The notes under the pieces are model-generated. The model was not told where the DNA came from. It did no database searches and saw nothing but the letters and a program-made list of their open reading frames with translations. From the IMG/VR virus record IMGVR_UViG_3300043399_000272, positions 1 to 64,000 of that record: 64,000 nt of DNA. One strand, written 5' to 3'. Made by a program: the position numbers and the translations under genes. This document shows, piece after piece, positions 2,820-31,201 of the stretch (its first letter is position 1; every line of letters begins with the position of its first letter).

Positions 2820-2850
2820 TGCTTACTCCGTTTTCTCATTCAATACATGT

Positions 2851-2879
2851 ATTATATGCCCAAACCGATTTATTGTCAA
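2851..2879 (-). promoter_or_regulatory. sigma70-type early promoter
   Basis: Perfect TTGACA-17-TATAAT. Confidence 0.8.
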
Positions 2880-2991
2880 CCGCGGATATAACGCCAACCA
2901 AGTCGTTCGCCGCTGTAGTAAAACAACTTACCACACCAGTCTTGGAACTGACCCATTTGTTGCTCCAGTCGGTCCTTGTCAGAGATATACA

Positions 2992-3321
2992 TTATTTGAC
3001 TCCAAAAGTATTGAGTTGGGGTTGCAGGGTGTTAATCAATTCAGTCTCGCGGGCATGAGCAGGACGCTTACCACGCACGACCTCGATAACACCGAACACA
3101 AAACGCTCGGCTCCACGCTCACGCAATGCACGGCTCAGACCCCAATTCTTGTTTTCAGCAAGGGCCCTTTGCATGTGTTTTTGCATACGACGGTTGAGAG
3201 TTTTGCGTACATTGCCTTTAAATGACAAAGCGGTAAGACCAATGTAATACTCAAGTGTTACAACATCCTGGATGTAGTAGATTACTTGGTTACGATCGGA
3301 CCTGCGCTTGCGTTTCATCAT
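2992..3321 (-). CDS. GIY-YIG family nuclease-like protein
   Basis: VIYYI...YYIG motif, R...H, E..LI...LN; the ATG at 3321 coincides with the predicted +1. Confidence 0.7.
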   Translation of the reverse strand: MMKRKRRSDRNQVIYYIQDVVTLEYYIGLTALSFKGNVRKTLNRRMQKHMQRALAENKNWGLSRALRERGAERFVFGVIEVVRGKRPAHARETELINTLQPQLNTFGVK

Positions 3322-6087: not shown

Positions 6088-6116
6088 AAAAAAATAGGGG
6101 CCGAAGCCCCTATTTT
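6088..6116. terminator. intrinsic terminator
   Basis: AAAATAGGGG-CCGAAG-CCCCTATTTT hairpin with a U-tract on the minus strand. Confidence 0.8.
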
Positions 6117-6738
6117 AACCTGGTCCATAGACCTCTTCTCGGCTTTTCATTCCAACCAAGCCCCCTTCTGCTTCGATTCGTTTGAATACATCCTCAAGCA
6201 AAATAGGTCTAAAGTCAGTCTGCTCTACACAAACACAGTGATATCGAGGATCAACTACTTCCTCTTCTACTGTAAAGGGTCTAGGATCATACTTACTAGT
6301 CCTTTCAACCTTGACACTTTTCATCACACGGTGAGCATGAAGATGTCCGTGAATGTTAGTACCAAATCGACCAAGGTTGCTTTCATGCACAGGGATGTGA
6401 CTGAGGATACAACCATTCATCACATGATACGCACGAATATCCCTAAAGTAAGGAGTGTAGTCCTCAAGTCTAAAGATATCGTGGTTGCCCTTGATAAGCA
6501 CCTTGTCGCCATTAAGTCTTGCAAGAGTCTTAAGGGCTTTGCGATTGATTACAACATCCCCGAGGTGATAGACTTTATCATTGGGACGAACTGTTTCATT
6601 CCAACGACGGATCATTTCTTCATCCATTTCCTCGGGACTATCCCAAGGACGGAGTTTCGTCACACCATCGGGGCCCATGAACCTACAAACACCTGTGTGA
6701 CCAAAGTGTGTATCACTAACTAAAAATACCGCGGGCAT
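6115..6738 (-). CDS. calcineurin-like metallophosphoesterase
   Basis: DTHFGH, HLGD, GNHD, SH, HGHLH motifs. Confidence 0.9.
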   Translation of the reverse strand: MPAVFLVSDTHFGHTGVCRFMGPDGVTKLRPWDSPEEMDEEMIRRWNETVRPNDKVYHLGDVVINRKALKTLARLNGDKVLIKGNHDIFRLEDYTPYFRDIRAYHVMNGCILSHIPVHESNLGRFGTNIHGHLHAHRVMKSVKVERTSKYDPRPFTVEEEVVDPRYHCVCVEQTDFRPILLEDVFKRIEAEGGLVGMKSREEVYGPG

Positions 6739-6739
6739 T

Positions 6740-6967
6740 TTATGCTCCTCTCAATTCTAATTTCTTATTCAGATAAGCAACAAACTCGGTATAGAATTTA
6801 GTACCAAAGTCTGGATGCCTTTTCAGGTCACCGACTGTTTTGTCACGTAATGCAACCATGTCTTCGGTTGACATATCATTGTAATAACGTTCCAAATCAA
6901 ATGTCGGTTGACCTTCGGCAGTTGTTGTTCTGTATTTCAACAGAAAGGCTTGTCGTTCTGTAGTCAC
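6740..6967 (-). CDS. hypothetical protein
   Basis: ORF track; operon context. Confidence 0.65.
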   Translation of the reverse strand: MTTERQAFLLKYRTTTAEGQPTFDLERYYNDMSTEDMVALRDKTVGDLKRHPDFGTKFYTEFVAYLNKKLELRGA

Positions 6968-7176
6968 TTTCGTTTTCCAACCTTGCTTACAACATCAGCC
7001 TTGCTTTGTTGCAACTGAGCCAAGAACCTGCGATAGACACGCAATGCGGCGATGCTCATTGGGTCTTCCTTACCTTCCAGTTCTTGGATACGGTCTTGTA
7101 ATTCTTTCTCTTTAGCACGATGACGTTCAACATCGGCTTTGAGACCTTTAGCATCGCCCCAGAAAAACTTAGTCAT
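6964..7176 (-). CDS. hypothetical coiled-coil protein
   Basis: AGGAG SD. Confidence 0.7.
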   Translation of the reverse strand: MTKFFWGDAKGLKADVERHRAKEKELQDRIQELEGKEDPMSIAALRVYRRFLAQLQQSKADVVSKVGKRK

Positions 7177-7190
7177 ATCGTGCTCCTTTC

Positions 7191-7385
7191 TTAAAAGTTA
7201 AAACTGCGAACCCACTCAAACCTAGTTGATGCAGGTACCCATCGGAATTGTTGCTTTTTACGCTCGGCTTGCTCCCAATCAACACAGAGCATAACCCAAC
7301 CACGATCGGTAGAGAAACCCACAGTGTCGGCAACACGGACGACTTGAAAAAGTCTACCTTGCATCTTTGCGACTACAACTGTCAT
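7191..7385 (-). CDS. hypothetical protein
   Basis: AGGAG SD; TTGACA-17-TATAAT promoter at ~7415-7443. Confidence 0.7.
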   Translation of the reverse strand: MTVVVAKMQGRLFQVVRVADTVGFSTDRGWVMLCVDWEQAERKKQQFRWVPASTRFEWVRSFNF

Positions 7386-7452
7386 TTTGGGCTCCTTTCA
7401 TAATCTATTCCATTATTATATGCCCAAAATGATTTATTGTCAATGTAATACT

Positions 7453-7917
7453 TTATGATGCATACCAGATTTCCTTAAAACCTTCATTTTCAGAAGGCAT
7501 GTCGAAGTTTTCAATCATGCTACTCATAACATGATCCGGAATGTTTTTACCAGGACGGTTTGCCAAACGCTTGGCTAATTCTTCTTTTTCGGGTGTAGCA
7601 AATACTATAGCAATATGCTCATAGTCTTGTAACATGTTGAACTTACGCTGGCGGCTCTTTACAGTTGTCGATGTTTGATCCCAAATAATATCTTTGCCTT
7701 GTTCTCGGGCTTCAACTACTTTGTCAGTCATTAAAGTTACAGCGATTGGCATATATTCATCAAATACCTCAGAATATGTTTTGCCCTGCTCTTTAGCATA
7801 CGCTTCTACAAATTCATCAGTGGAAACAATTACACACTCGTTAATCCAATTTTGATTCTTGACCCAAGTAGATTTACCTGAGCCAGGAACTCCTACTAAT
7901 TGATAGCACTTAGACAT
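7453..7917 (-). CDS. P-loop kinase (AAA_33 / polynucleotide-kinase-like)
   Basis: GVPGSGKST Walker A, STD, DQT, RxxxR lid. Confidence 0.85.
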   Translation of the reverse strand: MSKCYQLVGVPGSGKSTWVKNQNWINECVIVSTDEFVEAYAKEQGKTYSEVFDEYMPIAVTLMTDKVVEAREQGKDIIWDQTSTTVKSRQRKFNMLQDYEHIAIVFATPEKEELAKRLANRPGKNIPDHVMSSMIENFDMPSENEGFKEIWYAS

Positions 7918-8137
7918 ATTCTTTCTTTACTCGTCCAATACGGCTTGATTTGTTCCAGTCGTATGCAACACCGTCAGGAGTCTTACCGTCTTTTACAGAG
8001 TCAACACCAAACATGCCGCAGATTTCAAAGTCATCACTAGATATAGTGACAAATTCGTTCATCACCTTTGCGGTGTGCATTGCTTCTTCTAAAGTCATAA
8101 CCTCGAATGTTACTTTTGAACCTGTTACTTTAATCAT
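7910..8137 (-). CDS. hypothetical protein
   Basis: ORF track; overlaps both neighbours. Confidence 0.7.
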   Translation of the reverse strand: MIKVTGSKVTFEVMTLEEAMHTAKVMNEFVTISSDDFEICGMFGVDSVKDGKTPDGVAYDWNKSSRIGRVKKEYV

Positions 8138-8624
8138 AATTATCTTCTTTCATGTTGGGGACAATTATCCCACTATCTAAAACTGTACCATTGATATTGT
8201 GTGGTTCGTTTTCATCATAAGTCCAACCCAACACTTTCATCATCTTGTGTTTGACCATTAAGTTGGGGCTACGAAAGGTCTCGGTGTCATCGAATCCCAT
8301 CATTACGCCAACTTCACAGACTGCACCACTGCGACATACACCGGCGACACAATGCACGATAACATCCATGCGATTGTCTAATGCATGTTGCAACAGTTTA
8401 ACAAGTTTGTCAGCCTGTTCGTCAGTGATTTTGAATTCTTCACCCCAAGGGTCATTAAGTTCAAGGTCTAGGAACTCAAATTGATGAATCTCTTTAAACT
8501 GATATTTAGGGGTGGGGAACTCCATTGCAGGATCAACAATTTGAATCAGCATGGAATTCTCGCCAACACGGGTATGATATCCTTTTGGTATATCGGCAAG
8601 TGCTACGTTTTGAATCCAAGGCAT
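8130..8624 (-). CDS. Cys-dependent (PTP/DSP-like) phosphatase
   Basis: HCVAGVCRS (HCx5R); start moved to MPWIQN because the upstream part is a tRNA. Confidence 0.8.
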   Translation of the reverse strand: MPWIQNVALADIPKGYHTRVGENSMLIQIVDPAMEFPTPKYQFKEIHQFEFLDLELNDPWGEEFKITDEQADKLVKLLQHALDNRMDVIVHCVAGVCRSGAVCEVGVMMGFDDTETFRSPNLMVKHKMMKVLGWTYDENEPHNINGTVLDSGIIVPNMKEDNYD

Positions 8625-8641
8625 GATAACTCTCTTTTGTT

Positions 8642-8728
8642 TGGTACCCTGAGGGAGATTCGAACTCCCAGCTATTCGCTTAACCCACGACCTCAACGTG
8701 GTGACTCTACCAATTCGTCCACCAGGGC
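8642..8728 (-). tRNA. tRNA-Leu(GAG)
   Basis: Cloverleaf, loop TTGAGGT, long V arm, encoded CCA. Confidence 0.85.
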
Positions 8729-9188
8729 ATAATGTATTGTAAATTGTTTTGGGATTTTTGTCAACCGCTTAAAGAGCACCCTAGTTGCACTAAATGAATA
8801 TTAAAGTATTAAAATAAAGAACGTGTCGTTAGAAAGACTATTTGCGGTTGTTCGTCTAGGATGCTTTTGGAAGTACACTACCTTTTCACTAACAGAGCCT
8901 GTCTTATCGGCAGGGTGCGTAATATACTTTCAAAATTGTCGGCTACTCTCACTACAAAGCCCCGACATGAGTTTAAGGTGCTGTCCTACTTTATTGAATC
9001 TGGACAATTAAGTTATGCCCCACGACAGTTTTAAGTATCCCATGTAAGCGGGACTTAAGGTCAAGTTCGTGCGTACCTAGCAGTTTCTATGGTGATTGCC
9101 CCACCCACTTTAGATAACGTCAAAGTGTAAACCGAGTGATTGAGAGCAAGCACGTGTTTTCACAGAGGTGCTTGGCATATACTACTAT

Positions 9189-10625
9189 TTAGACCTTTTC
9201 AGGCAAATCGTAGCGATCCTTCATAACGGTCTTCAACATGACAGCTTCGGGTGTGAAGTCTTCCAAGTCGTTAGCCATTACAGAAGTAGCCAGCGCAGGG
9301 CTGAAGCCAGAAACAAGAGCGGTACCACTCTTATCGAACTTGACAGGGGTGTTGCCATAGGCAGCGTTCAAGTTCCAGAAAACTACACGAGGTAGTTCGT
9401 AGCCAGCTTCCTTGTACTTGCGTTCCATCATCTTGATGGCAGATTCATCCTTACCGTCAACAGCTCCGTCGAACTGCATGTCGGAGAAGATTACAAGAGT
9501 ACCAGGCATTTCTGCTTGTGGGACCTTGTTCTGAACCGCAGTCTTAAGGATCAAATCAAACGCCGCGTTCAAGTTAGTGTTAGCCACTTCGCCAGTGTTC
9601 ATTTGGTCAATCTTTTGATTGATGTTACCCTTAAGGTTGACTAGCTTCGGAGTACGGCTGAATGTTAGGAAACAGTCAGCAAACTTACCCTTGTTCTTGT
9701 CAGCAAAGTACAAGCCCAGAGATAGTGCAACATCCAAGCAGGACAAGCCAGACTTGGAGTTGTAACCACCTGCGGCGCAAGTCATAGAGCCGCTAGAGTC
9801 TACCATAGGTAGAACATCTGCATCACCGATGTAGTTAGGTAGTGCATCCCATTGTGCTTGTAGCGCATCAAGTTCTGTCTTAGACATGGACTTGCGGCTC
9901 CAGCTGTTGATAGCACCCTTCAATACATCGTAAGGGTATACTGCACCGGCGTTGATTTTAACGCCAGCTTCACCCTTCACCAACTTAGTTACGTATTCAG
10001 CGTAAGTTGTGCCGTGACGGCCAAACGCCTTCTTGTAACGTGCATGTGCCACAGAGGGAACATGGTTATAGTTGATGTTGTCCCAGTCGTTGGCACACAT
10101 TTGTGTTTCAACAACATTAGTCAAAGCAACAAGGCTCTTGCGATATTGCTTAGGAGTCATACCGAAGAATTCACGGATTTCACGTGCTACTTCGCCCTTA
10201 CGTGGAGTCCACTTTGCCGCCAAGCCGTTACGTGCGCGGAGCGCATCACCAAGCATAGTATATGCCTTGGCCTTTAGAGGCTTGGTCTTAAACACAAGTA
10301 GGTCATCGTAACGACCCAATTCAGGGACCTTTGCCATCAGACGCATAGCATCTTCTGGATTAGTCTTTTCCAGATACTGCAAGATATCACGGAAAAGTTG
10401 ACGTTCACCGGAACCACCACGAGCATCACGTGCCCATTGTGCGATACGGAGAGCCAGATCGGAGTTTTCTACGTAAGCCGCAGTGAAAGCAGGAACGATG
10501 TTCTTGCCACGGCTTGCACCGATGTTATAGAACAAGTCAACACATGCGTTAGCACTGGACTTGCGAGCCTTCATACCATTTGTGGTACGAGTAGATTGGT
10601 TCTTGATTGCTTCTGCGAATTGCAT
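9189..10625 (-). CDS. DUF2828-family helical + vWA protein (Ro60/TROVE-like)
   Basis: RDARGGSGER, GRYDDL, LAAKWTPR, MIDAS-type VDSSGSM, IFSDMQFD, VFWNL, LVSGFSP; AGGAG SD. Confidence 0.85.
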   Translation of the reverse strand: MQFAEAIKNQSTRTTNGMKARKSSANACVDLFYNIGASRGKNIVPAFTAAYVENSDLALRIAQWARDARGGSGERQLFRDILQYLEKTNPEDAMRLMAKVPELGRYDDLLVFKTKPLKAKAYTMLGDALRARNGLAAKWTPRKGEVAREIREFFGMTPKQYRKSLVALTNVVETQMCANDWDNINYNHVPSVAHARYKKAFGRHGTTYAEYVTKLVKGEAGVKINAGAVYPYDVLKGAINSWSRKSMSKTELDALQAQWDALPNYIGDADVLPMVDSSGSMTCAAGGYNSKSGLSCLDVALSLGLYFADKNKGKFADCFLTFSRTPKLVNLKGNINQKIDQMNTGEVANTNLNAAFDLILKTAVQNKVPQAEMPGTLVIFSDMQFDGAVDGKDESAIKMMERKYKEAGYELPRVVFWNLNAAYGNTPVKFDKSGTALVSGFSPALATSVMANDLEDFTPEAVMLKTVMKDRYDLPEKV

Positions 10626-10652: not shown

Positions 10653-10712
10653 AACAGGATGCGCTTTTAGTTTCATTTACAGTGAAATTTTAAAGTTGCT
10701 GAATGCATCCTA
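10653..10712 (-). ncRNA. CAGCA-handle RNA 1 (5' leader of the DUF2828 gene; Tyr-type anticodon hairpin)
   Basis: UAGGAUGC-AUUCAGCAA...UUUCA-CUGUAAA-UGAAA...GCAUCCUG. Confidence 0.7.
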
Positions 10713-10764: not shown

Positions 10765-10931
10765 ACAGGATCGTTGTTGGCTGCTTTTAGTATACTCAGG
10801 CCACCACTCTGAGTTTGCTAGTCTTGCTTCAATAAGCACCTTCAAGGCTAGGCAGTTTTACGTGCTTCGCTCCAGTAACTTACCACAGTGTCTAGCGGAT
10901 CATATAAATGATAATTGCTGTACCGATCCTA
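10765..10931 (-). ncRNA. CAGCA-handle RNA 2 (multi-hairpin module)
   Basis: UAGGAUCG-GUACAGCAA...CGAUCCUG. Confidence 0.65.
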
Positions 10932-10941
10932 AAAAATAAAA

Positions 10942-11169
10942 ACGGGATGTTCGGAGACGTAATTTTATTTTCTGGTTCTGCTCTGGTTACTCCCAGAACC
11001 CTAGCAACGATTCACGTTGCCTAGCTAGTGTTGTGTCTGTACTAGCATCATAGAATGTCTTTCCAATCTGTCATCAGTTCCGTTAGCGTCTAGTTTCCTA
11101 GATAAACCCTTTGGGGGCACCGTCTACTGCATTAGTTCAGTATGTTTTTAAATGCTGTAATCATCCCTA
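10942..11169 (-). ncRNA. CAGCA-handle RNA 3 (~230-nt multi-hairpin module)
   Basis: UAGGGAUG-AUUACAGCA...CAUCCCG. Confidence 0.65.
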
Positions 11170-13866: not shown

Positions 13867-13924
13867 ACACTTATTTATGCTCGGAGTGCTAAATTTGAGA
13901 TTTTATGCACTCTGACCAAAGATT

Positions 13925-13993
13925 TGGTTGCGGGTAAGGATTCGAACCTCTGGGCCGAGCTTATGAGACTGACCTATCACCTGATTTCCCGCG
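13925..13993 (-). tRNA. degenerate tRNA-fMet-like (CAT)
   Basis: CGCGGG/CCCGCA-ACCA with C1:A72, loop CTCATAA, reduced D arm. Confidence 0.55.
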
Positions 13994-14013: not shown

Positions 14014-14135
14014 AACAGGTTCTCTTTTTTCGTGCTACCATTACACTACAGTGACGACCAATTCACTGCCGGGATTCGAACTCGGACCTTCTTTTTTCCA
14101 GAAAGATAAAATTTAAATTGCTGAAAAGAACCTAA
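14014..14135 (-). ncRNA. CAGCA-handle RNA 4: circularly permuted tRNA (Ser GGA-type arm), YrlA-like
   Basis: Handle, anticodon arm, T arm (UUCGAAU), closed acceptor CAGUGA/UCACUG, D arm, handle. Confidence 0.75.
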
Positions 14136-15333: not shown

Positions 15334-15433
15334 TGGTGCCCCTAGCAGGACTCGAACCTGCACACGCTGGCTTATCTGGCCAGTGCTTTGACGGAGTATA
15401 AGGCCGCTTCTTTACCAATTAAGCTATAGGGGC
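15334..15433 (-). tRNA. tRNA-like RNA with a TAT loop plus an extra GAT-loop arm
   Basis: Normal acceptor, D and T arms; loops CTTATAC and CAGATAA. Confidence 0.6.
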
Positions 15434-17474: not shown

Positions 17475-17580
17475 ATTATAAAAATCGAAACCAGTACACA
17501 TGGTAGCTAATTTGTGCTTGCACTGCACTCAAGGCAGTGAACAGTCGCCACTCTGTCTTTCCTCTGATTTCAAAAACTTT

Positions 17581-17859
17581 GAAGGATTACACGGCGTTAA
17601 ACTGTCAGCCTATGCTCGTTTAACTTCTGTCCTTCGGCAGCTTGACCGCTGACAATACTTTTTCTTACCCTACTGGACCGACTTACCTTTTGAGCATCGT
17701 TGCTTTCGCAAAGCCCCCGCGCTCCGGCAGGGGTCGGTTTCCGTCTACTCTAGTACTTGTTATTGTCTTAGTATTTGGACGCTCTCCTTTGCACCTGATC
17801 TGTGGGAGATTAAGCAACTGACTTATCCAATCAGTCTAATCAGTCGCTACGATTATTCT
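17581..17859 (-). ncRNA. putative ~280-nt structured RNA
   Basis: GC-richer intergenic stretch with several long-range complementarities and GNRA-like loops. Confidence 0.45.
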
Positions 17860-20948: not shown

Positions 20949-21066
20949 AACGGGATACTTTTCTTGACGAATGCTCTACCTAATGAGCTAATCTGGCATG
21001 AAGCCAAATGTTGGAATCGAACCAACTACCTATCGTTTGATAGAATTTTGCTGTATGTATCCCTAA
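20949..21066 (-). ncRNA. CAGCA-handle RNA 5: circularly permuted tRNA, YrlA-like
   Basis: GGGAUAC-AUACAGCAA, T arm, acceptor closed by a UUCAU loop, D arm, GUAUCCC. Confidence 0.8.
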
Positions 21067-21153: not shown

Positions 21154-21519
21154 TTACAAACTAGAAATTGTTTTTCTTTTATATTTTCTAGCGTATTCTA
21201 TGCTACCCTTCATTGCGGCAGCACAACAAAATTTGTGATCTTTCCTAAAGATCCATTCATTCAACTTGAATGATTTCAATACTCTATCACCATTCCACCA
21301 TCCACGTTGAGTTTCAATGTAACCTTCTTGTTCAAGTTGGTCTCTCAATTTAGTGAATTCGTCATGGTCTTTATTACTGACACTAACTGCCTTGTCATAA
21401 CCCTTAAGAATTTTGATAAGGTCTTCATGTGTAGGATTGGTGCGGTCTTTAATAAAATCATGTTCAATCCTCACAGACACATCGGTAATGTATTGCTCGT
21501 CAATGACAAATTGTTTCAT
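21154..21519 (-). CDS. hypothetical protein
   Basis: AAGGA SD. Confidence 0.7.
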   Translation of the reverse strand: MKQFVIDEQYITDVSVRIEHDFIKDRTNPTHEDLIKILKGYDKAVSVSNKDHDEFTKLRDQLEQEGYIETQRGWWNGDRVLKSFKLNEWIFRKDHKFCCAAAMKGSIEYARKYKRKTISSL

Positions 21520-21685
21520 AACATTTCCTTATAGATTGGGAGCCTAGCTATCTGTCGTTACACAGCCTCACTAGATTGTCTCGTATACAAGAGTTTATAC
21601 TACCTTACTAATCTACTGATGTGTCACATACCAGCACAGTATGCTAGATTAGAAGGGACTCAATCGTACCGTCTATCCCATAAAT

Positions 21686-21765: not shown

Positions 21766-21888
21766 TGGTGCCGCCGCTAGGATTCGAACCTAGATAACCC
21801 CCTCGACATGGTTAAAGAAAATATGCTGAACGTACTCTAAAACAGAGTCACCCTTTTATAAGGCGTCCTACCGTTAGACGACAGCGGC
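21766..21888 (-). ncRNA. CAGCA-handle RNA 6: tRNA body with the handle in place of the anticodon loop
   Basis: GCCGCUG/CGGCGGC-ACCA, D and T arms; insert ACUCUG-UUU-UAGAGU-ACGUUCAGCAU. Confidence 0.75.
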
Positions 21889-21896
21889 ATTAAATT

Positions 21897-21972
21897 TGGT
21901 GCAGCCAGTGGACTCGAACCACTGCGGGAATCTAGAATGCGGGGGACATGCCCCCTACCCCTCCATTACTGC
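21897..21972 (-). ncRNA. tRNA-like RNA with acceptor and T arm only
   Basis: UUCGAGU T loop and ACCA end; no D arm; GGGGG-CAUGU-CCCCC hairpin. Confidence 0.55.
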
Positions 21973-22052: not shown

Positions 22053-22062
22053 ATTAATTGAA

Positions 22063-22128
22063 TTTAGGGTGACAGTGCGTTAGTGGCCGATACTGTCATT
22101 CACCACTCGCTTCTACGCATACCCTAAA
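22063..22128 (-). ncRNA. putative compact pseudoknot RNA
   Basis: Four complementary segment pairs in 66 nt. Confidence 0.45.
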
Positions 22129-22132
22129 ATAT

Positions 22133-23833: not shown

Positions 23834-23899
23834 AACAGGATCGTTTTTTACGGTTTAGATTAGAAGTCTAATGTATTTTGATTGCTGAACCGATCCTAA
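23834..23899 (-). ncRNA. CAGCA-handle RNA 7 (Arg UCU-type anticodon hairpin)
   Basis: UAGGAUCG-GUUCAGCAA...UUAGA-CUUCUAA-UCUAA...CGAUCCUG. Confidence 0.75.
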
Positions 23900-24158: not shown

Positions 24159-24221
24159 AACAGGATGCTGGTTTGCTTTTTTCCAAATAAAAAGTTTTTT
24201 AATTTGCTGGAAGCATCCTAA
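24159..24221 (-). ncRNA. CAGCA-handle RNA 8
   Basis: UAGGAUGC-UUCCAGCAA...CUUUUU-AUUUGGA-AAAAAG...GCAUCCUG. Confidence 0.7.
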
Positions 24222-24390: not shown

Positions 24391-24477
24391 TGGTGGAGCC
24401 CTAAGGAATCGAACCTCTTGCCACCACCCACCTTATTATGGCTACGATTTTACAGACCGCAAGCGGGAAAGGGCTCC
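24391..24477 (-). tRNA. D-armless tRNA-Tyr(GTA)-like RNA
   Basis: Perfect acceptor stem, loop CTGTAAA, no D hairpin. Confidence 0.65.
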
Positions 24478-24487
24478 ATTAAATTGT

Positions 24488-24562
24488 TGGTATCCTGTAT
24501 GGGTTTTGATCCCATCTCACTAGTTTGAAGGACTAGCGGCCACACCAGCTGCCTCACAGGAT
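24488..24562 (-). tRNA. tRNA-Glu(TTC), second copy, atypical
   Basis: Loop CCTTCAA (C33), T loop ATCAAAA. Confidence 0.7.
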
Positions 24563-24571
24563 ATATATTGT

Positions 24572-25470: not shown

Positions 25471-27012
25471 ATGTTATTTAATCCCACCGAGTATACAACA
25501 GTTTTTCTTAGTTTTGACGAACCTAACGCTGACACCAACTATCAACACTTACTAACACTATGCCCTGGAGCATTACGTGTGCATGGCGTTAAGGGTAGTG
25601 ACACCGCTCACAAAGCAGTCGCACAAATTAGTCAAACGAAAAATGTAATTATAGTAGATGCCGACAATTTTGTCAAGCCTGATTTTTATTCTCAGACTTA
25701 CGAGATTGGCAACACCGACCTTACCTCTACTGTACTCAGCTTCACAGCACATAACAAGATAAATGGGCAACAATACGGGAATGGTGGCATCAAAGTATGG
25801 CCTGTAGAGTTGCTAAAAAGTATGAAAACGCATGAAAATTCTGATAATGCTAGTACTTTAGTAGACTTTGATTTCAGCAACTATAAACAAATGAACTATG
25901 TTGCTAGTGAGGTCAGATATGCTAGCCATAGACAAGCATGGCGTGCTGGCTTCCGTGAGGGTGTCAAACTTATGCTAGACAATGGGCAGTACCAACGTGA
26001 TATACATAACATCGACTGGCGCAACTATGACAGACTTTGGAACTGGATGCACATCGGCAGTGATGTTGAGCATGGGTACTGGGCTATACACGGAGCACGG
26101 TTTGGATGCTGGAATGCTGTTAGAAAATTTGACCTATCCAAACTACACAACTTTGAGTATTTGGACTATTTGTTTGACCTTTTCAAAGATACGAACTTTG
26201 TAGATGGTTGTGAACAATTCGGGCATCACATACAAACATTGACTAATGACAGACGTATAGGCACAGTCTACAGTCCTAGACTTAGTAAAGAGTATAGAGA
26301 ATCAGTCAAGCCCTGTTTGCGTATGCCCAATGACGAACCCTATGACATTGTGTTTATTAGCTACAACGAATTAAACGCAGACAAAAACTACCGTGAACTA
26401 ATAAAACGATTCCCGAGGGCTAAGCGAATTGACGGAGTACAGGGCATACACAATGCACACATAGAAGCAGCAAAACTATGTTCTACAGACTATTTCTGGG
26501 TCGTAGACGGTGACGCAGAAATTGTTCCCGAATTTAATTTTGATTATGTTGTCCCATTCTATGACACATTAAAAGTTAGGGTGTGGCGTGCTGAAAATCC
26601 AGTTAACGGCTTGACATATGGCTACGGAGGTGTTAAACTATTACCTAGAATAGCCACGGTTCGTATGCGTACAGATAGACCCGACATGACTACAAGTATC
26701 TGTAAGGATTACGAGCCAATCTTTGTTGTTAGTAATATAACACGTTTTGATACTGATCCATTTAATACTTGGCGAAGTGCATTTAGAGAATGTACTAAGC
26801 TAGCAAGTCAAGTAATAGACAACTCATACGAAAGTATAGAACGACTAGATATTTGGTGTTCAGTGGGTGATAATGACTACGCAATAGACGGAGCAAAAGC
26901 AGGTCGTGAGTATGGCACTTATAATAAAGACAATTTGACAGCATTAAGAAAGATAAACGACTTCATGTGGATGCGTGAACAGTATGACAGATTTTACAAA
27001 AATACCCTTTGA
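25471..27012 (+). CDS. tandem glycosyltransferase-like (GT-A, DxD) domain protein
   Basis: Two homologous halves: F.S..E.NAD, AH, VDAD/VDGD, YG.GG.K, WR..FRE. Confidence 0.75.
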   Translation: MLFNPTEYTTVFLSFDEPNADTNYQHLLTLCPGALRVHGVKGSDTAHKAVAQISQTKNVIIVDADNFVKPDFYSQTYEIGNTDLTSTVLSFTAHNKINGQQYGNGGIKVWPVELLKSMKTHENSDNASTLVDFDFSNYKQMNYVASEVRYASHRQAWRAGFREGVKLMLDNGQYQRDIHNIDWRNYDRLWNWMHIGSDVEHGYWAIHGARFGCWNAVRKFDLSKLHNFEYLDYLFDLFKDTNFVDGCEQFGHHIQTLTNDRRIGTVYSPRLSKEYRESVKPCLRMPNDEPYDIVFISYNELNADKNYRELIKRFPRAKRIDGVQGIHNAHIEAAKLCSTDYFWVVDGDAEIVPEFNFDYVVPFYDTLKVRVWRAENPVNGLTYGYGGVKLLPRIATVRMRTDRPDMTTSICKDYEPIFVVSNITRFDTDPFNTWRSAFRECTKLASQVIDNSYESIERLDIWCSVGDNDYAIDGAKAGREYGTYNKDNLTALRKINDFMWMREQYDRFYKNTL

Positions 27013-27946
27013 CCGTATAGTTAAGTTCGGTCAAGACACTATGCTAGACAAGAACTTGTTTAGTATTAGCTGGATACTGGGTAGATTCTGTAATTACAAA
27101 TGTAGCTATTGTTGGCCTTACGCTAATGGCGACAAGCCAGATCACTTAGAATTAGAGTTGTATAAGAGAACAATGGATGAGATTCGCTGTCAGGCGGCAT
27201 TAAATGGGTTCACAAGTTTTCATTGGTCGTTTAGTGGCGGAGAACCAACCGCATATAAACATGTAATAGAACTCAGTCAAAAGGTTTTATTAGACAGTAT
27301 TCATATGACTACCAATCTAAGCCCGGGATTTCAGTTTTGGGATCGATGGTTGAATTCTACTGTGTTGAGTAGGCGCAGAAGTTTAACTGCTAGCTTTCAC
27401 CATGAGTTTGCTAACGAACAAGAGTTTGGAGACAAGATACTACACTTAATGAATAGTGGTGTGTTAGTAACCATAAATCAAGTTATGGTTCCAGAAAAGT
27501 TTGACGAGTTGTATGAGCGTTGTATAAGATTCAACGATAGAGGTATTAACGTAACACTAAAGCCCCAATCTGATCCTACAGCAAGTCGTGTCGTAGATGG
27601 CTACAGTGATGAAATGATGAACAAAATGAGAACAGGTTTTCCGCAACATTTCAACGACACCGACATACTACAAGTCAAACTAATAGACGATGAAAATAAA
27701 GTTTGGCATCTGGATCAAGCTGAAAGATTTAACAGTTATGGGTTTAACAAGTTTACCAATTGGACTTGTAATTCTGGATACCAAAGTATTATAATTAGAG
27801 GTAATGAGGTTAAGCGTGGTTATAGTTGCCACGACAAACCATTAGGAACACTCACTGACGGATTTAAAATCTTTGAAGAAAAACAAAGATGTATAACTCC
27901 TTCATGTGTAAGTAGCGCAGATAGTAAGATACCAAAATGCAAATAG
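26984..27946 (+). CDS. radical SAM protein
   Basis: CNYKCSYC, SGGEPT, C-terminal Cys cluster. Confidence 0.9.
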   Translation: MTDFTKIPFDRIVKFGQDTMLDKNLFSISWILGRFCNYKCSYCWPYANGDKPDHLELELYKRTMDEIRCQAALNGFTSFHWSFSGGEPTAYKHVIELSQKVLLDSIHMTTNLSPGFQFWDRWLNSTVLSRRRSLTASFHHEFANEQEFGDKILHLMNSGVLVTINQVMVPEKFDELYERCIRFNDRGINVTLKPQSDPTASRVVDGYSDEMMNKMRTGFPQHFNDTDILQVKLIDDENKVWHLDQAERFNSYGFNKFTNWTCNSGYQSIIIRGNEVKRGYSCHDKPLGTLTDGFKIFEEKQRCITPSCVSSADSKIPKCK

Positions 27947-28554
27947 ATACAGAACATTTACATCACTGGATGAGAGCCATACGACAAAGCAATAATCCTA
28001 TGCGTACTATGGATGCTTTCTGGAGTGGACAGATTAAAAGCAAAGAATGGCTAATCAATTGTTTGGGGCAAGTTGTTGATAAGCCTGTTACAGTTGACAT
28101 TCACGGAGGATGGGTAGGTGTACTTGCTAGTATGTTATTTCAAAGCAACATTCCATGTACGTATATTCGTAGCGTAGACATTGACCCATTGTGCGAACAT
28201 ACAGCAAATACAATGAATCAAATAGAATATGACAGCGGTAGATTTAGAGCTATCACCTCAGATATGTGTGACATACGCAGTGATACTGATGTTATTATAA
28301 ACACTAGCGCGGAGCATATAACACAAGATCAATATGATTTGTGGCTGTCAGGACTACCCAACAATTCCTTAATTGTCATTCAGGGAAATAATTATGACAT
28401 TCCTGAGCATGTTAGAATCAGCAAAGACTTAGATGACTTTGCCGAACAATCACAGTTAGACATAGATTTTATCGGAGAACTCGATTTACCGATATATAAA
28501 AGATACATGATTATAGGGAGAAAACATGGATACAACAGTTCGTACACTGGTTAA
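27937..28554 (+). CDS. SAM-dependent methyltransferase-like protein
   Basis: IHGGWVGVLA, SVDIDP, INTSAEH. Confidence 0.75.
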   Translation: MQIDTEHLHHWMRAIRQSNNPMRTMDAFWSGQIKSKEWLINCLGQVVDKPVTVDIHGGWVGVLASMLFQSNIPCTYIRSVDIDPLCEHTANTMNQIEYDSGRFRAITSDMCDIRSDTDVIINTSAEHITQDQYDLWLSGLPNNSLIVIQGNNYDIPEHVRISKDLDDFAEQSQLDIDFIGELDLPIYKRYMIIGRKHGYNSSYTG

Positions 28555-28948
28555 GACGTTAAGTTACAGAATTACAGCGGCAGCGACTGTATTTCTATTG
28601 AGCATTCTTTTGGCTTATGGATCTGGCTTTGGAGTCAAGTTCCTAATCATCACACTTACTCTAGGTTATGTAATCTATTTCACACATGAATTCTTGTGGA
28701 ATAAGTTTAACTTACTACGAGTAGACGGTGATGATAAGCCTATGCGTAGTCTTATCAAAACGATTAGCTGGCGTATTACTAGCTTTATTGTTATGTTCTT
28801 TATTAGCAAGGCTTTGGGCTTGTCGAATGAGGACGCACTATATTGGGTAATCGCTAACAATATCGCATTCTTGGTTGTACATTACCTACACGAACGTGTG
28901 TGGAATCGTATTACTTGGGGTAAAAAATCTATTCTAGCAACAGCATAA
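28526..28948 (+). CDS. tandem DUF2061-like membrane protein
   Basis: Two repeats of KT.S.RI...Y..HE..W. Confidence 0.75.
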   Translation: MDTTVRTLVKTLSYRITAAATVFLLSILLAYGSGFGVKFLIITLTLGYVIYFTHEFLWNKFNLLRVDGDDKPMRSLIKTISWRITSFIVMFFISKALGLSNEDALYWVIANNIAFLVVHYLHERVWNRITWGKKSILATA

Positions 28949-29889
28949 AAGTACTTCATTTAGAAGTTACTAATAAGTGTCAAGCAAGTTGTCCCATGTG
29001 CGCCCGAAATTTACAGGGCGGCATGGACAACCCTTTTATGTCCTTAAGTGAAATCACATTTGAGGATTTTAAGTCGTGGTTTAGTGTTGACTTCATTAAA
29101 CAATTAGACAAGTTATATATGTGCGGTAACTTAGGCGATCCAATCATTGCCAAAGACACAATAGAAATATTCAGTTATTGTAGAGAAATCAACCCAGATA
29201 TGTGGTTGAGTATGAATACTAACGGCAGTGCCAGAACACGTAGATTCTGGGAACAACTAGCAGAATTAAGAGTAGTTGTCAGGTTTGGAATAGATGGTTT
29301 GTCCGATACACATAGTTTATACAGAAAAGGTACAGACTTTGATACTATTATCAAAAACGCAACAACATTCATTAGACATGGTGGTATGGCTATTTGGGAC
29401 ATGTTAATATTTGAACACAATAAAGACCAAGTAGACGAATGCCATGAACTAAGTAAAGAATTAGGATTTAGTGAATTCGTACCCAAGAATACAGCCAGAT
29501 TCAAAGAAGATAAATTAGATGTAATAGATAGAACTGGAAAGAAAATCTATACACTATATCCTAGCGATAAGAGTAAAAAACTAATAAAGAACGAGATAAA
29601 GCCTAGCGAGATTAAGTGTAAGGTAAAGTTTGGTAGCTTATATGTTACTAGTAACGGTATTGTTACTCCTTGTTGTTGGCTTGGTATTGATGAATTACCG
29701 CATCATAATCCTAGTAGAATAGATTATCTTACTAAAATTGGTAAGTTCTATTCACTAAAAGAAAATACATTACAAGAAATCTTTGACAGTAAAGTATTTG
29801 AAAAGATTGAAGAAACGTGGAGTTCTGATCCATTAACCGAATGTAGCAAACAGTGTGGAAGTTATGACAGATTCAATAGTCAATTCTAA
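28927..29889 (+). CDS. radical SAM/SPASM protein with no ATG upstream of its CxxxCxxC motif
   Basis: Frame open from 28924: KIYSSNSIKVLHLEVTNKCQASCPMC; start uncertain. Confidence 0.75.
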   Translation: MYSSNSIKVLHLEVTNKCQASCPMCARNLQGGMDNPFMSLSEITFEDFKSWFSVDFIKQLDKLYMCGNLGDPIIAKDTIEIFSYCREINPDMWLSMNTNGSARTRRFWEQLAELRVVVRFGIDGLSDTHSLYRKGTDFDTIIKNATTFIRHGGMAIWDMLIFEHNKDQVDECHELSKELGFSEFVPKNTARFKEDKLDVIDRTGKKIYTLYPSDKSKKLIKNEIKPSEIKCKVKFGSLYVTSNGIVTPCCWLGIDELPHHNPSRIDYLTKIGKFYSLKENTLQEIFDSKVFEKIEETWSSDPLTECSKQCGSYDRFNSQF

Positions 29890-31201
29890 AACGTTCTGCC
29901 CACTACCTTTTATACATATGGCAACAAGACCTAACGGTGATGTTCGTGTATGTTGTACTGCTAACGCTAGTGGTGCTGATATTGTAGACAGTAAAGAGAT
30001 AGGGCTTGTGACACAAAACGGAATCAAAATGAATCTACGTAGTCATACTATAGAAGAAGTATGGAACTCTGATAGTATGCGTAGAACACGTTTACAGATT
30101 AGTGAAGGTACGATACCCGAAAGCTGTACTAAATGCTTTGAAGAAGAAAATAAGGGAATAAAAAGTAAACGCAATTGGGAAACGATAGTCTGGAGTGAAA
30201 GACTGAACTTACATGATATCGTAACTAAGATGAATGTTGATGGAAGCATGCCAGTAGAAATTCCATACTTTGATTTAAGACTAGGAAATCTATGTAATTT
30301 AAAATGCGTGATGTGCAGCCCGCATGATAGTTCTAGCTGGATCAAAGATTATAAAATACAATATCCAAAGTACAAATCAATCTCACTAATTAATGATAGT
30401 CAGTGGGATAGAACTATGGACTATACATGGTACAAGAAGGGTTCGTTTATTGATTCTATGAAGAATCAAATCAAGTATATCAAAGAATTGTACTTTGCTG
30501 GCGGCGAGCCACTATTGATTCCAGAACACTATAGTATATTACAATGGCTTGTTGACGAAGGACATAGCAAAAATGTTATACTGAGATACAACTCAAATGG
30601 AACTGAGTTGCCAGAACATTTAATTAAATTATGGGAACAGTTCAAGTTAGTCAAGTTTAATTTCAGTATTGACGCTTACGGAGACAAAAACGATTATATA
30701 CGTTATCCAAGCAAGTGGACTGATATTGCTAGTAACTTACATATGTTAGACGAAACCGCAGACAATATTGTTGTCAATGTTGCGTGTGCTGTTAATTTAC
30801 TAAATGTCTGTTACTTAGACGAATTAGTAGACTGGAAAATGGGTCAGAATTTCACTAAGGTTAATACAAAACAGTATGGGGCTGGACTGATTGGATTACA
30901 TTTAGTATATTTGCCTAGCTATCTAAACGTCAGAGTATTACCCGAGCACATCAAGCGCCAAGCTACACTAAAGATTAATCAACTGTTAAAACGATATAGT
31001 GATAGAGACTTTGATGCTGATCCATACGGAAAACAACGATGGATTGGCTTGATTAACTATATGAGTATTGATTGGACTCATAAACTACACGACTGTGTAG
31101 AATACTTAAAAACAACTGACGAAACTAGGGGTACGGATTTTACTAAAACTTTTCCAATATTGAGTGAATTGGAAGAGCATAGTCTATTCCTTCAAAAGTA
31201 A
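29864..31201 (+). CDS. twitch-domain radical SAM protein
   Basis: FCPLPF...VCC, CNLKCVMC, AGGEP. Confidence 0.9.
   Translation: MTDSIVNSKTFCPLPFIHMATRPNGDVRVCCTANASGADIVDSKEIGLVTQNGIKMNLRSHTIEEVWNSDSMRRTRLQISEGTIPESCTKCFEEENKGIKSKRNWETIVWSERLNLHDIVTKMNVDGSMPVEIPYFDLRLGNLCNLKCVMCSPHDSSSWIKDYKIQYPKYKSISLINDSQWDRTMDYTWYKKGSFIDSMKNQIKYIKELYFAGGEPLLIPEHYSILQWLVDEGHSKNVILRYNSNGTELPEHLIKLWEQFKLVKFNFSIDAYGDKNDYIRYPSKWTDIASNLHMLDETADNIVVNVACAVNLLNVCYLDELVDWKMGQNFTKVNTKQYGAGLIGLHLVYLPSYLNVRVLPEHIKRQATLKINQLLKRYSDRDFDADPYGKQRWIGLINYMSIDWTHKLHDCVEYLKTTDETRGTDFTKTFPILSELEEHSLFLQK

What the first reader, a model, noticed from the sequence alone, without database searches (positions are those of the whole stretch)
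21766..21888. tRNA with the handle inside its anticodon arm: non-permuted counterpart of the YrlA-like RNAs
Seen: normal tRNA ends (GCCGCUG/CGGCGGC-A-CCA) and normal D and T arms, but the anticodon loop is replaced by about 55 nt. In this insert the handle halves are in reversed order and joined by a UUU loop (AAAAGGGUG-ACUCUG-UUU-UAGAGU-ACGUUCAGCAU). The 20949-21066 element is its circular permutation, with ends in the handle and the acceptor closed by a loop. Inference: one genome holds both topologies, so the handle works as a structure and not as an end-processing signal, and this version could be aminoacylated.
Basis: partly seen in the sequence, partly recalled or inferred. Interest (0 to 1): 0.8.

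Follow-up and report, generated by a model that had tools for sequence, protein, structure and literature searches.

The report
Phage tRNA carrying a Y-RNA handle
A large phage encodes a tRNA-shaped RNA with a normal CCA end whose anticodon stem carries an extra arm, the same arm that closes the phage's Y-RNA-like small RNAs; this chimera is conserved in many big phages that also encode a Ro60-like protein, and in cultured phages it has been filed as a pseudo-tRNA.

Summary
The element at 21766-21888 (minus strand) is real and sits head to tail in a 46-tRNA array. Rfam's tRNA model scores it 40.4 bits with a large insert. A 49-nt handle domain interrupts the 5' strand of the anticodon stem, and a 7-nt anticodon-like loop (AUGUCGA) remains. 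The domain holds an A-rich strand, a hairpin and a GUUCAGCAU box. These are the modules of seven canonical handle RNAs in the window, two of them YrlA-like, in circularly permuted order. I found 37 distinct relatives in viral contigs. All helices covary, the tRNA tertiary nucleotides are invariant, and CCA is kept in 33 of 37. Cultured carriers include Vibrio phage KVP40 (annotated tRNA-Pseudo-3/4/5) and Cronobacter phage S13. The DUF2828/DUF7788 protein at 9189-10625 has a Ro60 fold by structure comparison. Best reading: a stable tRNA/Y-RNA chimera that presents a docking arm for the Ro-like protein on a tRNA body with a free end. Binding, charging and lack of splicing are inferred, not shown. 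I rate it a new variant of a known kind.

The parts
21766..21888 (-). Handle-tRNA, 123 nt: acceptor (RNA 1-7/113-119), D arm (10-24), N26, split anticodon stem, handle domain, anticodon-like hairpin, 4-nt variable loop, T arm (96-112), A73, CCA
   Evidence: Rfam tRNA 40.4 bits. Model R1 finds relatives down to E about 1e-7. Pair counts on 37 distinct sequences. It lies in register in the array, 5 nt before tRNA-Thr and 8 nt after the upstream tRNA-like element.
21812..21860 (-). Inserted handle domain (RNA 29-77): linker UAUAAAAGG, hairpin, GUUCAGCAU box, linker AUUUUCUUUAA
   Evidence: Bracketed by covarying pairs 27-43 (C-G 25, U-A 10, A-U 1, G.U 1) and 28-42 (U-A 19, G-C 15, C-G 2).
21832..21851 (-). 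Handle hairpin: G38-C57, bulged U39, G40.A56, A41-U55 through U45-A51, loop (G)UUU(U)
   Evidence: MFE and centroid folds. RNAalifold recovers the same hairpin family-wide. Four of its seven pairs show changes on both sides.
21823..21831 (-). CAGCA box (GUUCAGCAU), the hallmark of the handle's strand a
   Evidence: Same box next to the 5' stem strand of all seven canonical handles. CAGCA was required by my search patterns, so its invariance in A5 is partly by construction; KVP40 copies show CGGCA and CUGCA variants.
21801..21811 (-). Anticodon-like hairpin CC-AUGUCGA-GG (loop would read GUC)
   Evidence: Aligned with UCC-AUGUCAA-GGA of relatives; predicted by RNAalifold.
20952..21063 (-). Permuted YrlA-like RNA: handle stem GGGAUAC/GUAUCCC, ACAGCAA box, hairpin, T arm, loop-closed acceptor, D arm
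   Evidence: Fold z = -5.6; YrlA model positions 27-81 at 26.5 bits, below the gathering score; descriptor.
14017..14133 (-). Second permuted YrlA-like handle RNA (AGGUUCUUU / UCAGCAAU ... AAAAAGAGAACCU)
24161..24220 (-). Short canonical handle RNA, 60 nt
   Evidence: nhmmer half-match E = 0.0011; sub-threshold Rfam Class I hit of 32.5 bits.
23836..23898 (-). Short canonical handle RNA, 63 nt (UAGGAUCG-GUUCAGCAAU ... AAAAAA-CGAUCCUG)
10655..10712 (-). Short canonical handle RNA, 58 nt
10766..10931 (-). Long canonical handle RNA, 166 nt
10944..11167 (-). Long canonical handle RNA, about 224 nt (GGGAUG-AUUACAGCAUUU ... CAUCCC)
   Evidence: The nhmmer hit across its 3' end; the fold keeps the terminal stem, z = -2.7.
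9189..10625 (-). Ro60-fold protein (Pfam DUF2828 + DUF7788; phrog_850 'RNA-binding protein'), the presumed partner of the handle
   Evidence: Invariant MIDAS motif DxSGS. AlphaFold2 pLDDT 89.8. The only full-length Foldseek matches are Ro60 proteins: 9KOP at 5.9e-9, 1YVP with TM 0.64.
6115..8696 (-). Neighbouring RNA end-healing-type genes: metallophosphoesterase (6115-6738), AAA_33 kinase (7453-7917), DSP/PTP-type phosphatase (8130-8696)
   Evidence: Pfam and PHROG matches. Their link to the RNA is an inference from context only.

Best explanation
The element is a functional, conserved phage RNA that I call a handle-tRNA. It has an L-shaped tRNA body, is presumably matured like its neighbours in the array, and ends in N73-CCA. 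The 5' strand of its anticodon stem is interrupted by a roughly 50-nt domain, which forms a three-way junction.

That domain is a helix flanked by an A-rich strand and an NNNCAGCAA strand. It is the same module that closes this phage's Y-RNA-like small RNAs, where the helix is formed by the 5' and 3' ends.

The module is most likely the docking site for the phage's Ro60-fold protein. Because it works as a folded structure, it tolerates either topology. In the YrlA-like form the acceptor is closed and the ends lie in the handle. In the handle-tRNA the handle is capped by a loop and the acceptor end is free.

The RNA would therefore tether the Ro-like ring to something that recognises a tRNA with a free CCA end. 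Candidates are a CCA-adding or repair enzyme, a synthetase, EF-Tu, an exonuclease, or a tRNA-directed host defence nuclease that it decoys. This would serve upkeep or protection of the phage's large tRNA pool.

Shown: the anatomy, its conservation and covariation, the shared modules, the Ro60 fold of the protein, and the genomic linkage. Inferred: protein binding, retention of the insert in the mature RNA, and the downstream partner.
For: The tRNA body is under selection.
- All seven acceptor pairs, three D pairs and four T pairs show changes on both sides. 97.6% of cells are paired, against 76.7% in shuffles.
- U8, A14, G18, G19, A21 and U54-A58 are invariant in 37 of 37. The 15:48 pair covaries (A:U 33, G:C 2). 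CCA is intact in 33 of 37.

The handle domain is conserved as a structure.
- The hairpin is recovered by RNAalifold.
- Stems differ between lineages (ACUCUG, UAUCCU, CGAAUUCU, CGGAGCCU) while the box and the A-rich strand stay.

The same modules occur in seven canonical handle RNAs in the window and in many relatives, including E. coli phage SUSP1 directly after its Ro-like gene.

The partner protein has a Ro60 fold. It lies within the held stretch in 17 of 54 loci. It is 0.2-12 kb from the RNA in cultured phages S13, BUCT-ZZ01, VS2 and PC-Liy1.

A metatranscriptome contig covers the whole element with the insert retained.

Published precedents: Y RNAs tether Ro60 to PNPase and YrlA mimics tRNA (PMC4201824). 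A phage Ro60 binds phage Y-like RNAs (PMC12135203). The Ro60-like gp130 of phage Bas63 lies upstream of its tRNAs and counters the Ppl defence (10.1101/2024.10.10.617714).
Against: No binding data exist for this protein family with these RNAs.

The handle does not match the Ro-binding stem of Rfam's YrlA model. Matches cover only the tRNA-like part and stay far below the gathering score.

The Ro-like gene is 11 kb from the candidate in this window, and 37 of 54 held stretches lack it, although many of those are short.

The RNA evidence is a single assembled contig that extends past both mature ends, so it could come from a precursor or from DNA.

The anticodon-like loop and the clean cloverleaf left after deleting the insert look intron-like.

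Part of the family's apparent invariance (CAGCA, CCUG..AAGG, GUUCGAA) was imposed by my search patterns.
Confidence: 0.6

Rival explanations
1. It is an intron-containing tRNA gene. The ~49-nt domain is cut out after transcription and the exons are joined to give an ordinary decoding tRNA (tRNA-Asp GUC in this window).
For: Deleting RNA 29-77 leaves a clean cloverleaf with a 5-bp anticodon stem, a 7-nt loop with U33, and a 4-nt variable loop. In L009 the same scaffold has an ORF weakly similar to GIY-YIG/SegE endonucleases exactly in place of the handle domain, which is how mobile introns behave. ARAGORN with introns allowed reports an intron-containing tRNA, though with different and forced boundaries.
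Against: The insert is too short for a group I core, there is no Rfam intron hit, and the junction is a three-way junction rather than a bulge-helix-bulge. The insert conserves a module that also exists as free-standing RNAs. The same scaffold carries different 'anticodons' (GUC, UCU, UCC, UGU, UGA) and loops of 8-9 nt. Relatives such as KVP40 Pseudo-4 and Pseudo-5 have no anticodon-like loop at all. The window already has two normal tRNA-Asp(GUC) genes. The only true RNA run shows the insert retained and no skipping joint.
Confidence: 0.12
2. The handle hairpin is a processing site. The RNA is cleaved in the hairpin loop, where canonical handle RNAs have their ends, giving a two-piece tRNA-like molecule or tRNA halves held together by the handle stem.
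For: In this window's copy the loop region reads CUCUG-UUUU-AGAG. That resembles a canonical 3' end (...CCUG-UU) fused to a canonical 5' leader and start (UUUU-AGG...). Canonical RNAs do end at this position of the helix.
Against: In 36 of 37 family members the loop is a compact GNNA tetraloop (GACA, GUUA, GUCA, GCCA and others) without the U-rich flanks. The metatranscriptome contig runs through the loop.
Confidence: 0.1
3. It is a dead tRNA gene, disrupted by insertion of a mobile or repeated handle sequence, as the 'tRNA-Pseudo' annotation in KVP40 implies.
For: KVP40 and phi-pp2 annotations and the phi-pp2 paper call these pseudo-forms of low score. tRNA finders miss the element or score it poorly.
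Against: There are 37 distinct sequences from many contigs with compensatory changes in every helix, invariant tertiary nucleotides and a retained CCA. That is not what decay looks like.
Confidence: 0.04
4. The resemblance between the insert and the handle is a coincidence in an A/U-rich region.
For: The sequence-only profile gives E = 2.2. The loose descriptor occurs by chance in 28 of 300 shuffled windows.
Against: The same arrangement recurs in 37 distinct relatives with covarying stems, and in cultured phages next to the Ro-like gene.
Confidence: 0.02

Closest known systems
YrlA, the bacterial and phage Y RNA with a tRNA-like domain (Rfam RF02553; Chen et al. 2014, PMC4201824)
   Same: Both combine T-arm and D-arm tRNA mimicry with a protein-binding stem, are encoded with a Ro60-type protein, and often occur in several copies per genome. 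The window's elements at 20952-21063 and 14017-14133 have this architecture.
   Different: In YrlA the RNA ends lie in the Ro-binding stem and the acceptor is closed by a loop. Here the acceptor is open with N73-CCA, the handle is a loop-capped arm in the anticodon stem, and an anticodon-like hairpin is kept. The handle (CAGCAA box plus A-rich strand) is not matched by the Rfam model. The candidate gets no YrlA hit, and the sibling scores 26.5 bits against a gathering score of 69.
Deinococcus radiodurans Yrn1
   Same: It is the precedent for a Y RNA whose tRNA-like parts are oriented differently relative to the ends than in YrlA (PMC4201824).
   Different: In Yrn1 the Ro-binding stem occupies the acceptor position and there is no free CCA acceptor end. 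Here a true acceptor end coexists with the handle.
'tRNA-Pseudo-3/4/5' of Vibrio phage KVP40, and 'tRNA-OTHER' or the 121-nt 'tRNA-Ser' of phi-pp2 and Cronobacter phage S13
   Same: They are members of the same family (R1 hits at 42.6, 33.9 and 48.1 bits; sequences read).
   Different: They are annotated as pseudogenes or undetermined tRNAs, with no link to Y RNAs or to the Ro-like gene. Some have the handle enclosed by a full anticodon stem instead of the split stem seen here.
Thermus phage phiLo Ro60 with Yrl1 and Yrl2 (PMC12135203; PDB 9KOP, 9L5Y)
   Same: A phage Ro60-fold protein with phage-encoded Y-like RNAs. It is the best structural match of the window's protein.
   Different: About 15% sequence identity and a different Pfam family (TROVE versus DUF2828/DUF7788). 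The Yrl RNAs are described with a CGAA motif rather than the CAGCAA box, and no CCA-ended tRNA form is reported.
tmRNA and viral tRNA-like structures
   Same: These are tRNA-shaped acceptor modules that can be charged without acting as ordinary decoders. Six family members carry the G3:U70/A73 alanine identity set, as tmRNA does.
   Different: There is no mRNA-like part and no tmRNA hit. The window's copy lacks G3:U70.
Dictyostelid Class I RNAs (RF01414; PMC7919456)
   Same: About 60 nt, a short stem joining the 5' and 3' ends, a conserved ...ACAGCAA motif next to the 5' stem strand, and a 3' CUG(U). This is the layout of the short canonical handle RNAs.
   Different: Only one window copy reaches 32.5 bits, below the gathering score of 41.5. 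None reaches E <= 0.05 in three related loci. The known binding protein is an RRM protein, and no evolutionary link is shown.

Membership tests
tRNA (RF00005) | Acceptor, D and T arms with the conserved tertiary nucleotides (U8, A14, G18-G19, T-loop UUCRA, 15:48 pair) | tested here: met
   40.4 bits against a gathering score of 29; invariant positions and a covarying 15:48 pair; covarying stems.
tRNA (RF00005) | Continuous 5-bp anticodon stem with a 7-nt loop carrying a lineage-stable anticodon | tested here: not met
   The 5' strand is interrupted by about 49 nt. Loop sequence and length (7-9 nt) vary within one scaffold.
tRNA (RF00005) | Aminoacylation and decoding | not testable with these tools
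   Only indirect evidence: CCA kept in 33 of 37, and G3:U70 with A73 in 6 members but not in the window's copy.
YrlA / Y RNA (RF02553) | Score at or above Rfam's gathering score (69 bits) | tested here: not met
   No YrlA hit on the candidate. The sibling at 20973-21030 scores 26.5 bits over the tRNA-like part only.
YrlA / Y RNA (RF02553) | 5' and 3' ends paired in the protein-binding stem, with the acceptor-like stem closed by a loop | tested here: not met
   The candidate has an open acceptor with CCA and a loop-capped handle. The feature is met by 20952-21063 and 14017-14133.
YrlA / Y RNA (RF02553) | Encoded with a Ro60 orthologue | tested here: met
   A Ro60-fold protein lies at 9189-10625, 11 kb away in the same array region. 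Linkage is seen in 17 of 54 loci and in cultured phages.
YrlA / Y RNA (RF02553) | Bound by Ro60 | not testable with these tools
   Needs immunoprecipitation or gel-shift assays.
Intron-containing tRNA (group I or bulge-helix-bulge type) | A group I catalytic core, or a bulge-helix-bulge motif at the exon-intron junctions | tested here: not met
   A 49-nt insert, no intron family at E <= 10, and a three-way-junction geometry.
Intron-containing tRNA (group I or bulge-helix-bulge type) | A spliced product is observed | tested here: inconclusive
   The one metatranscriptome contig retains the insert and shows no skipping joint, but contigs cannot show absence.
Ro60 / TROVE protein (for 9189-10625) | HEAT-repeat ring plus a vWA domain with a MIDAS motif | tested here: met
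   Full-length Foldseek matches to Ro60 only (E 6e-9 to 2e-7, TM up to 0.64); invariant DxSGS motif.
Ro60 / TROVE protein (for 9189-10625) | Match to the Pfam TROVE domain, or a significant sequence match to a solved Ro60 | tested here: not met
   Pfam gives DUF2828 and DUF7788 only. The profile against the PDB ranks Ro60 first, but at E = 0.13.
Dictyostelid Class I RNA (RF01414), for the canonical short handles | Score at or above the gathering score (41.5 bits) | tested here: not met
   The best score is 32.5 bits at 24161-24218. No hits at E <= 0.05 in L008, L014 or L018.

The most novel reading that the evidence does not exclude
Handle-tRNAs are charged. Those with G3:U70 and A73 would be charged by AlaRS whatever their anticodon region. 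They would act as aminoacylated adaptors or decoys that bring the phage Ro-like ring to the translation or tRNA-repair machinery, or to tRNA-directed defence nucleases. On this reading the CAGCAA-box handle is an ancient ribonucleoprotein module of DUF2828-type Ro proteins, and dictyostelid Class I RNAs are its eukaryotic counterpart.
Probability: 0.15. Interest if true: 0.9.

Novelty: new variant of a known kind. Interest (0 to 1): 0.72.

Why it matters
Ro60 and its Y RNAs are conserved from bacteria to humans, but why bacterial Y RNAs mimic tRNA is still unclear. This family suggests that the handle, the presumed Ro-binding module, can be grafted onto a complete, CCA-ended tRNA. That implies the tRNA part is used as a tRNA-shaped ligand, not only as a scaffold.

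The family occurs in cultured phages (KVP40, Cronobacter S13), and related handle RNAs occur in phages that infect E. coli K-12. A Ro60-like phage protein has just been reported to counter an anti-phage defence. The question of what phage Ro/Y-RNA particles do therefore becomes directly testable.

It also re-labels a set of 'pseudo-tRNAs' in well-known phage genomes as conserved functional RNAs.

Tried and rejected
- **Swapped-order sequence profile.** An nhmmer profile of the six canonical handles joined in swapped order gave only E = 2.2 at the candidate. The stems covary, so a sequence-only model is the wrong tool.
- **First hairpin descriptor.** It was too strict and missed the window's own copy. 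I replaced it with a covariance model.
- **ARAGORN with introns.** It gives tRNA-SeC(tca) with a 26-nt intron and an unpaired 26-nt variable arm. I rejected this as a forced fit that the family alignment does not support.
- **Suppressor reading.** I first read CUUUAAC/CUCUAAC as a suppressor anticodon loop (after). I abandoned this once 37 sequences showed the conserved hairpin is UCC-AUGUCAA-GGA.
- **Closing helix.** A helix GUAN/N'UAC inside the insert is present only in a subset, so it is not part of the consensus.
- **Near-identity search.** A search of deposited phages with 4.3 kb of the array found nothing useful.
- **Cellular genomes.** The scan was truncated, so absence from cells is not proven.
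- **Class I RNA.** Membership of the short handles is not supported beyond one sub-threshold hit.
- **Protein atlas.** It gave only viral neighbours for the Ro-like protein, so it does not address a link to eukaryotes.
- **The 61-nt 'skip' in run X3.** Twelve other letters replace the insert in a probably-DNA library at 90% likeness. That is another organism's ordinary tRNA, not splicing.

Full report
**Context.** The window comes from a 260-kb uncultured phage contig (IMG/VR UViG_3300043399_000272). Locus L001 from that contig is 100% identical over the neighbouring ORF and the 520 nt upstream of it that include the element. The best-holding public runs are freshwater metagenomes. Between 8.6 and 24.7 kb, ARAGORN finds 46 tRNA genes, all on the minus strand. 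No deposited phage is close at the DNA level.

**The observation.** Read on the minus strand, 21888-21766 has a 7-bp acceptor stem, U8, a D arm (GUCU/GGAC), a perfect T arm (CUAGG-UUCGAAU-CCUAG), A73 and an encoded CCA. It lies 8 nt after the upstream tRNA-like element and 5 nt before tRNA-Thr.
- Rfam's tRNA model matches end to end at 40.4 bits, with a 62-nt insertion in the anticodon arm. Default ARAGORN misses it.
- The hairpin ACUCUG-UUU-UAGAGU appears in both the MFE and centroid folds. The whole molecule does not fold better than shuffles (z = -0.8).
- The sibling at 20949-21066 folds as handle stem, hairpin, T arm, loop-closed acceptor and D arm (z = -5.6). It matches the tRNA-like part of Rfam YrlA only weakly.

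**The handle is a repeated module.** The gaps of the array hold seven RNAs with the layout 5'-(UU)UAGG-stem-NNNCAGCAA(U) ... A-rich-stem'-CCUG(UU)-3'. Three are short (58-63 nt), two carry a permuted tRNA-like module, and two are long. Related contigs hold many more. The candidate's insert reads AAAAG-GGUGACUCUG-UUU-UAGAGUAC-GUUCAGCAU, which is the 3' half followed by the 5' half.
- By sequence alone this is not significant. The swapped-order profile gives E = 2.2, and a loose structural descriptor is expected 0.09 times per window.

**Comparative evidence.** The ORF next to the element led to 23 related contigs. Two further versions with different stems appeared there: L008/L010 and L014.
- A covariance model built from the candidate (R1), combined with two pattern scans of the viral collection, gave 54 full-length matches of 117-126 nt. 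These are 37 distinct sequences, on contigs of up to 524 kb.
- My patterns required CAGCA, GUUCGAA and, in the second scan, CCUG..AAGG. The invariance of those motifs is therefore partly by construction. The stems were not constrained.

**Revised anatomy.** The family consensus, in order, is:
- acceptor, U8, N9, D arm, N26, then two nucleotides (27-28);
- UAUAAAAGGU, [UAUCCU], GNNA, [AGGAUA], CAGUCAGCAAU, then a linker;
- UCC, AUGUCAA, GGA, then two nucleotides (42-43);
- a 4-nt variable loop, T arm, acceptor, N73, CCA.

The 3' strand of the anticodon stem (39-43) pairs with a split 5' strand, so the handle domain is inserted into the 5' strand of the anticodon stem and an anticodon-like loop remains.
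- On a MAFFT alignment (A5), the full structure has 97.6% of cells paired, against 76.7% in shuffles and 39-51% with slid partners. 23 of 28 pairs show changes on both sides.
- The two split pairs read C-G 25, U-A 10, A-U 1, G.U 1 and U-A 19, G-C 15, C-G 2.
- RNAalifold, given no structure, recovers the acceptor, D stem, handle hairpin, anticodon-like hairpin and T stem.
- In the window's copy the pairs are C26-G91, C27-G90, possibly U28.G89, then C78-G88 and C79-G87 around the loop AUGUCGA.

**A tRNA body under selection.** U8, A14, G18, G19, A21 and U54-U55-C56-R57-A58 are invariant in 37 of 37. The 15:48 pair is A:U in 33 and G:C in 2. CCA is intact in 33 of 37. N73 varies. Six members have G3:U70 with A73. 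By established identity rules (my own knowledge, not from a paper read here) that set is sufficient for alanine charging of an acceptor helix.
- The anticodon-like loop is not a stable anticodon. One scaffold carries AUGUCAA or AUUCUAA. Another carries AUUGUAA, AUUGAAA or the 9-nt ACUAUGAAG.

**Cultured phages.** Distant BLAST finds the family in Vibrio phage KVP40 and relatives, Cronobacter phage S13 and Synechococcus phage BUCT-ZZ01.
- KVP40's RefSeq record labels three copies tRNA-Pseudo-3/4/5 and leaves a fourth unannotated. The phi-pp2 paper calls them pseudo-forms of low score (PMC3468402).
- In S13, a 121-nt 'tRNA-Ser', a 113-nt 'tRNA-OTHER' and a permuted YrlA-like RNA follow the Ro-like gene directly.
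- These relatives show a second sub-architecture, in which a full 5-bp anticodon stem encloses the handle insert and no anticodon-like loop is left.

**The protein.** The 478-aa product of 9189-10625 matches Pfam DUF2828 and DUF7788 and PHROG 850 'RNA-binding protein'.
- Sequence searches do not reach a solved Ro60 significantly.
- An AlphaFold2 model built on 51 diverse homologues (pLDDT 89.8, pTM 0.89) has Ro60 proteins as its only full-length structural matches: 9KOP at 5.9e-9, 9L5Y, 1YVR, and 1YVP with TM 0.64. The vWA MIDAS motif is invariant.
- The same family is annotated 'Ro-like RNA binding protein' in mycobacteriophages and is present in 702 phage records.
- The gene lies within the held stretch in 17 of 54 handle-tRNA loci.
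- Its neighbours here are a kinase and two phosphatases of the RNA end-healing type.

**Transcript evidence.** In one true metatranscriptome, a 154-nt contig covers 21764-21889 with the insert retained, one other letter and one gap. No joint skips the insert. The only 'skip' is in a probably-DNA library, where 12 other letters replace the insert. This is weak support for the unspliced form and cannot exclude splicing.

**Interpretation.** The best-supported reading is a stable tRNA/Y-RNA chimera. The handle is a structural docking module, presumably for the Ro-like protein, displayed either with the RNA ends in it (Y-like, YrlA-like) or as a loop-capped arm on a tRNA with a free CCA end.
- The GNNA cap, at exactly the place where canonical RNAs have their termini, argues that the helix itself is what is recognised, not the ends.
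- By analogy with Ro60/Y RNA/PNPase particles (PMC4201824, PMC12135203) and with the anti-defence role reported for the Ro60-like gp130 of phage Bas63 (10.1101/2024.10.10.617714), I infer a tethering or decoy role in upkeep or protection of the phage tRNA pool.
- Binding, charging and function are not shown.

**Rivals.** An excised intron is the main rival. It is favoured by the clean cloverleaf left after deletion and by L009, where an endonuclease-like ORF replaces the handle domain. It is disfavoured by the conservation of the module, the unstable 'anticodons', the relatives without any anticodon-like loop, the redundancy with two normal tRNA-Asp genes, and the retained insert in RNA. Cleavage in the handle loop, a dead gene, and chance resemblance are less likely, for the reasons given under each rival.

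**Novelty.** Y RNAs with tRNA-like domains and phage Ro60 homologues are known. These loci have been visible since the KVP40 genome, but only as pseudo-tRNAs. In seven full-text searches of the held library I found no description of a CCA-ended tRNA carrying the Y-like handle in its anticodon stem, nor of the CAGCAA-box handle family. The nearest statement is the Bas63 preprint's guess that some annotated tRNAs may be Y RNAs. I rate it a new variant of a known kind.

Noticed in passing
window 24161-24218 (-); also 23836-23898 and 10655-10712: The short canonical handle RNAs have the layout that defines dictyostelid Class I RNAs: about 60 nt, a stem joining the ends, a ...ACAGCAA motif after the 5' stem strand, and a 3' CUG(U). 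One copy scores 32.5 bits on RF01414 (gathering score 41.5). The Class I paper reports the class in no other organism.
   Followed up: partly
L009:2670-3302 (ORF 2704-3249): This locus has the same tRNA scaffold as L008, with identical flanks, but the 41-nt handle domain is replaced by about 535 nt carrying a 181-aa ORF. The ORF has weak GIY-YIG/SegE similarity (E about 0.008, below Pfam's cutoff). I do not know whether this allele is dead, or whether the site tolerates a large insert.
   Followed up: partly
window 15334-15433 (-); L018:15064-15155, L007:16030-16122, L070:179-270, L103:7128-7218, L174:596-689, L175:313-404: A recurrent 91-100-nt tRNA with a UAU anticodon loop (CUUAUAC/UUUAUAU) and a long variable arm whose loop reads CAGAU(A/U)A. 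ARAGORN calls the window copy 'tRNA-???' with a 4-base anticodon. It looks like a conserved class II-shaped tRNA-Ile(UAU)-like species.
   Followed up: no
window 21520-21685 (-), upstream of ORF 21154-21519: A ~165-nt leader (GGGAUAGACGG...GAGUCCC...AAUCUAG...UAUACGAGACAAUCUAG...GCUAGGCUCCCAAUCUAUAAGGA) is strongly conserved upstream of the same small ORF in L004, L005, L007, L008, L018 and L020. There is no Rfam match. It may be a structured leader or a small RNA.
   Followed up: no
window 21896-21972, 22056-22130, 24391-24478, 24488-24565, 13880-13990 (all -): Further odd elements in the array: tRNA-like RNAs with T arms and CCA ends but aberrant D or anticodon regions (one hits tRNA-Sec at 30.8 bits, one hits tRNA at 36.6 bits), and a 75-nt stem-closed RNA at 22056-22130. 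None carries the CAGCAA handle.
   Followed up: partly
window 17475-17859 and 8729-9188 (-): Two long gaps of 385 and 460 nt, with no ORF of 90 aa or more, no tRNA and no Rfam match, lie inside the array. The second lies just downstream of the Ro-like gene's stop codon on the minus strand. Their sequences look structured by eye.
   Followed up: no
window 26975-31201 (+): A cluster of three radical SAM proteins, two of which carry SPASM domains, lies just past the tRNA array.
   Followed up: no
L331 (Escherichia phage SUSP1, NC_028808.2 84.4-86.3 kb): CAGCAA-box handle RNAs with a different stem (AGACC.../...GGUCU), and a permuted YrlA-like element, lie unannotated between the Ro-like gene and the tRNAs of a phage that infects E. 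coli MG1655. One of them overlaps an annotated 'hypothetical protein' CDS.
   Followed up: partly
L024:7715-7805 and L088:7931-8021: Unrelated viral contigs picked up by the pattern scan carry class II-shaped tRNAs with a CUA (amber-reading) anticodon loop. That suggests stop-codon reassignment or suppression in those phages.
   Followed up: no
L021:6911-7022: A permuted handle RNA in which the T arm is followed directly by the D arm, with no acceptor-like stem. This is a third variant of the tRNA-like module.
   Followed up: no
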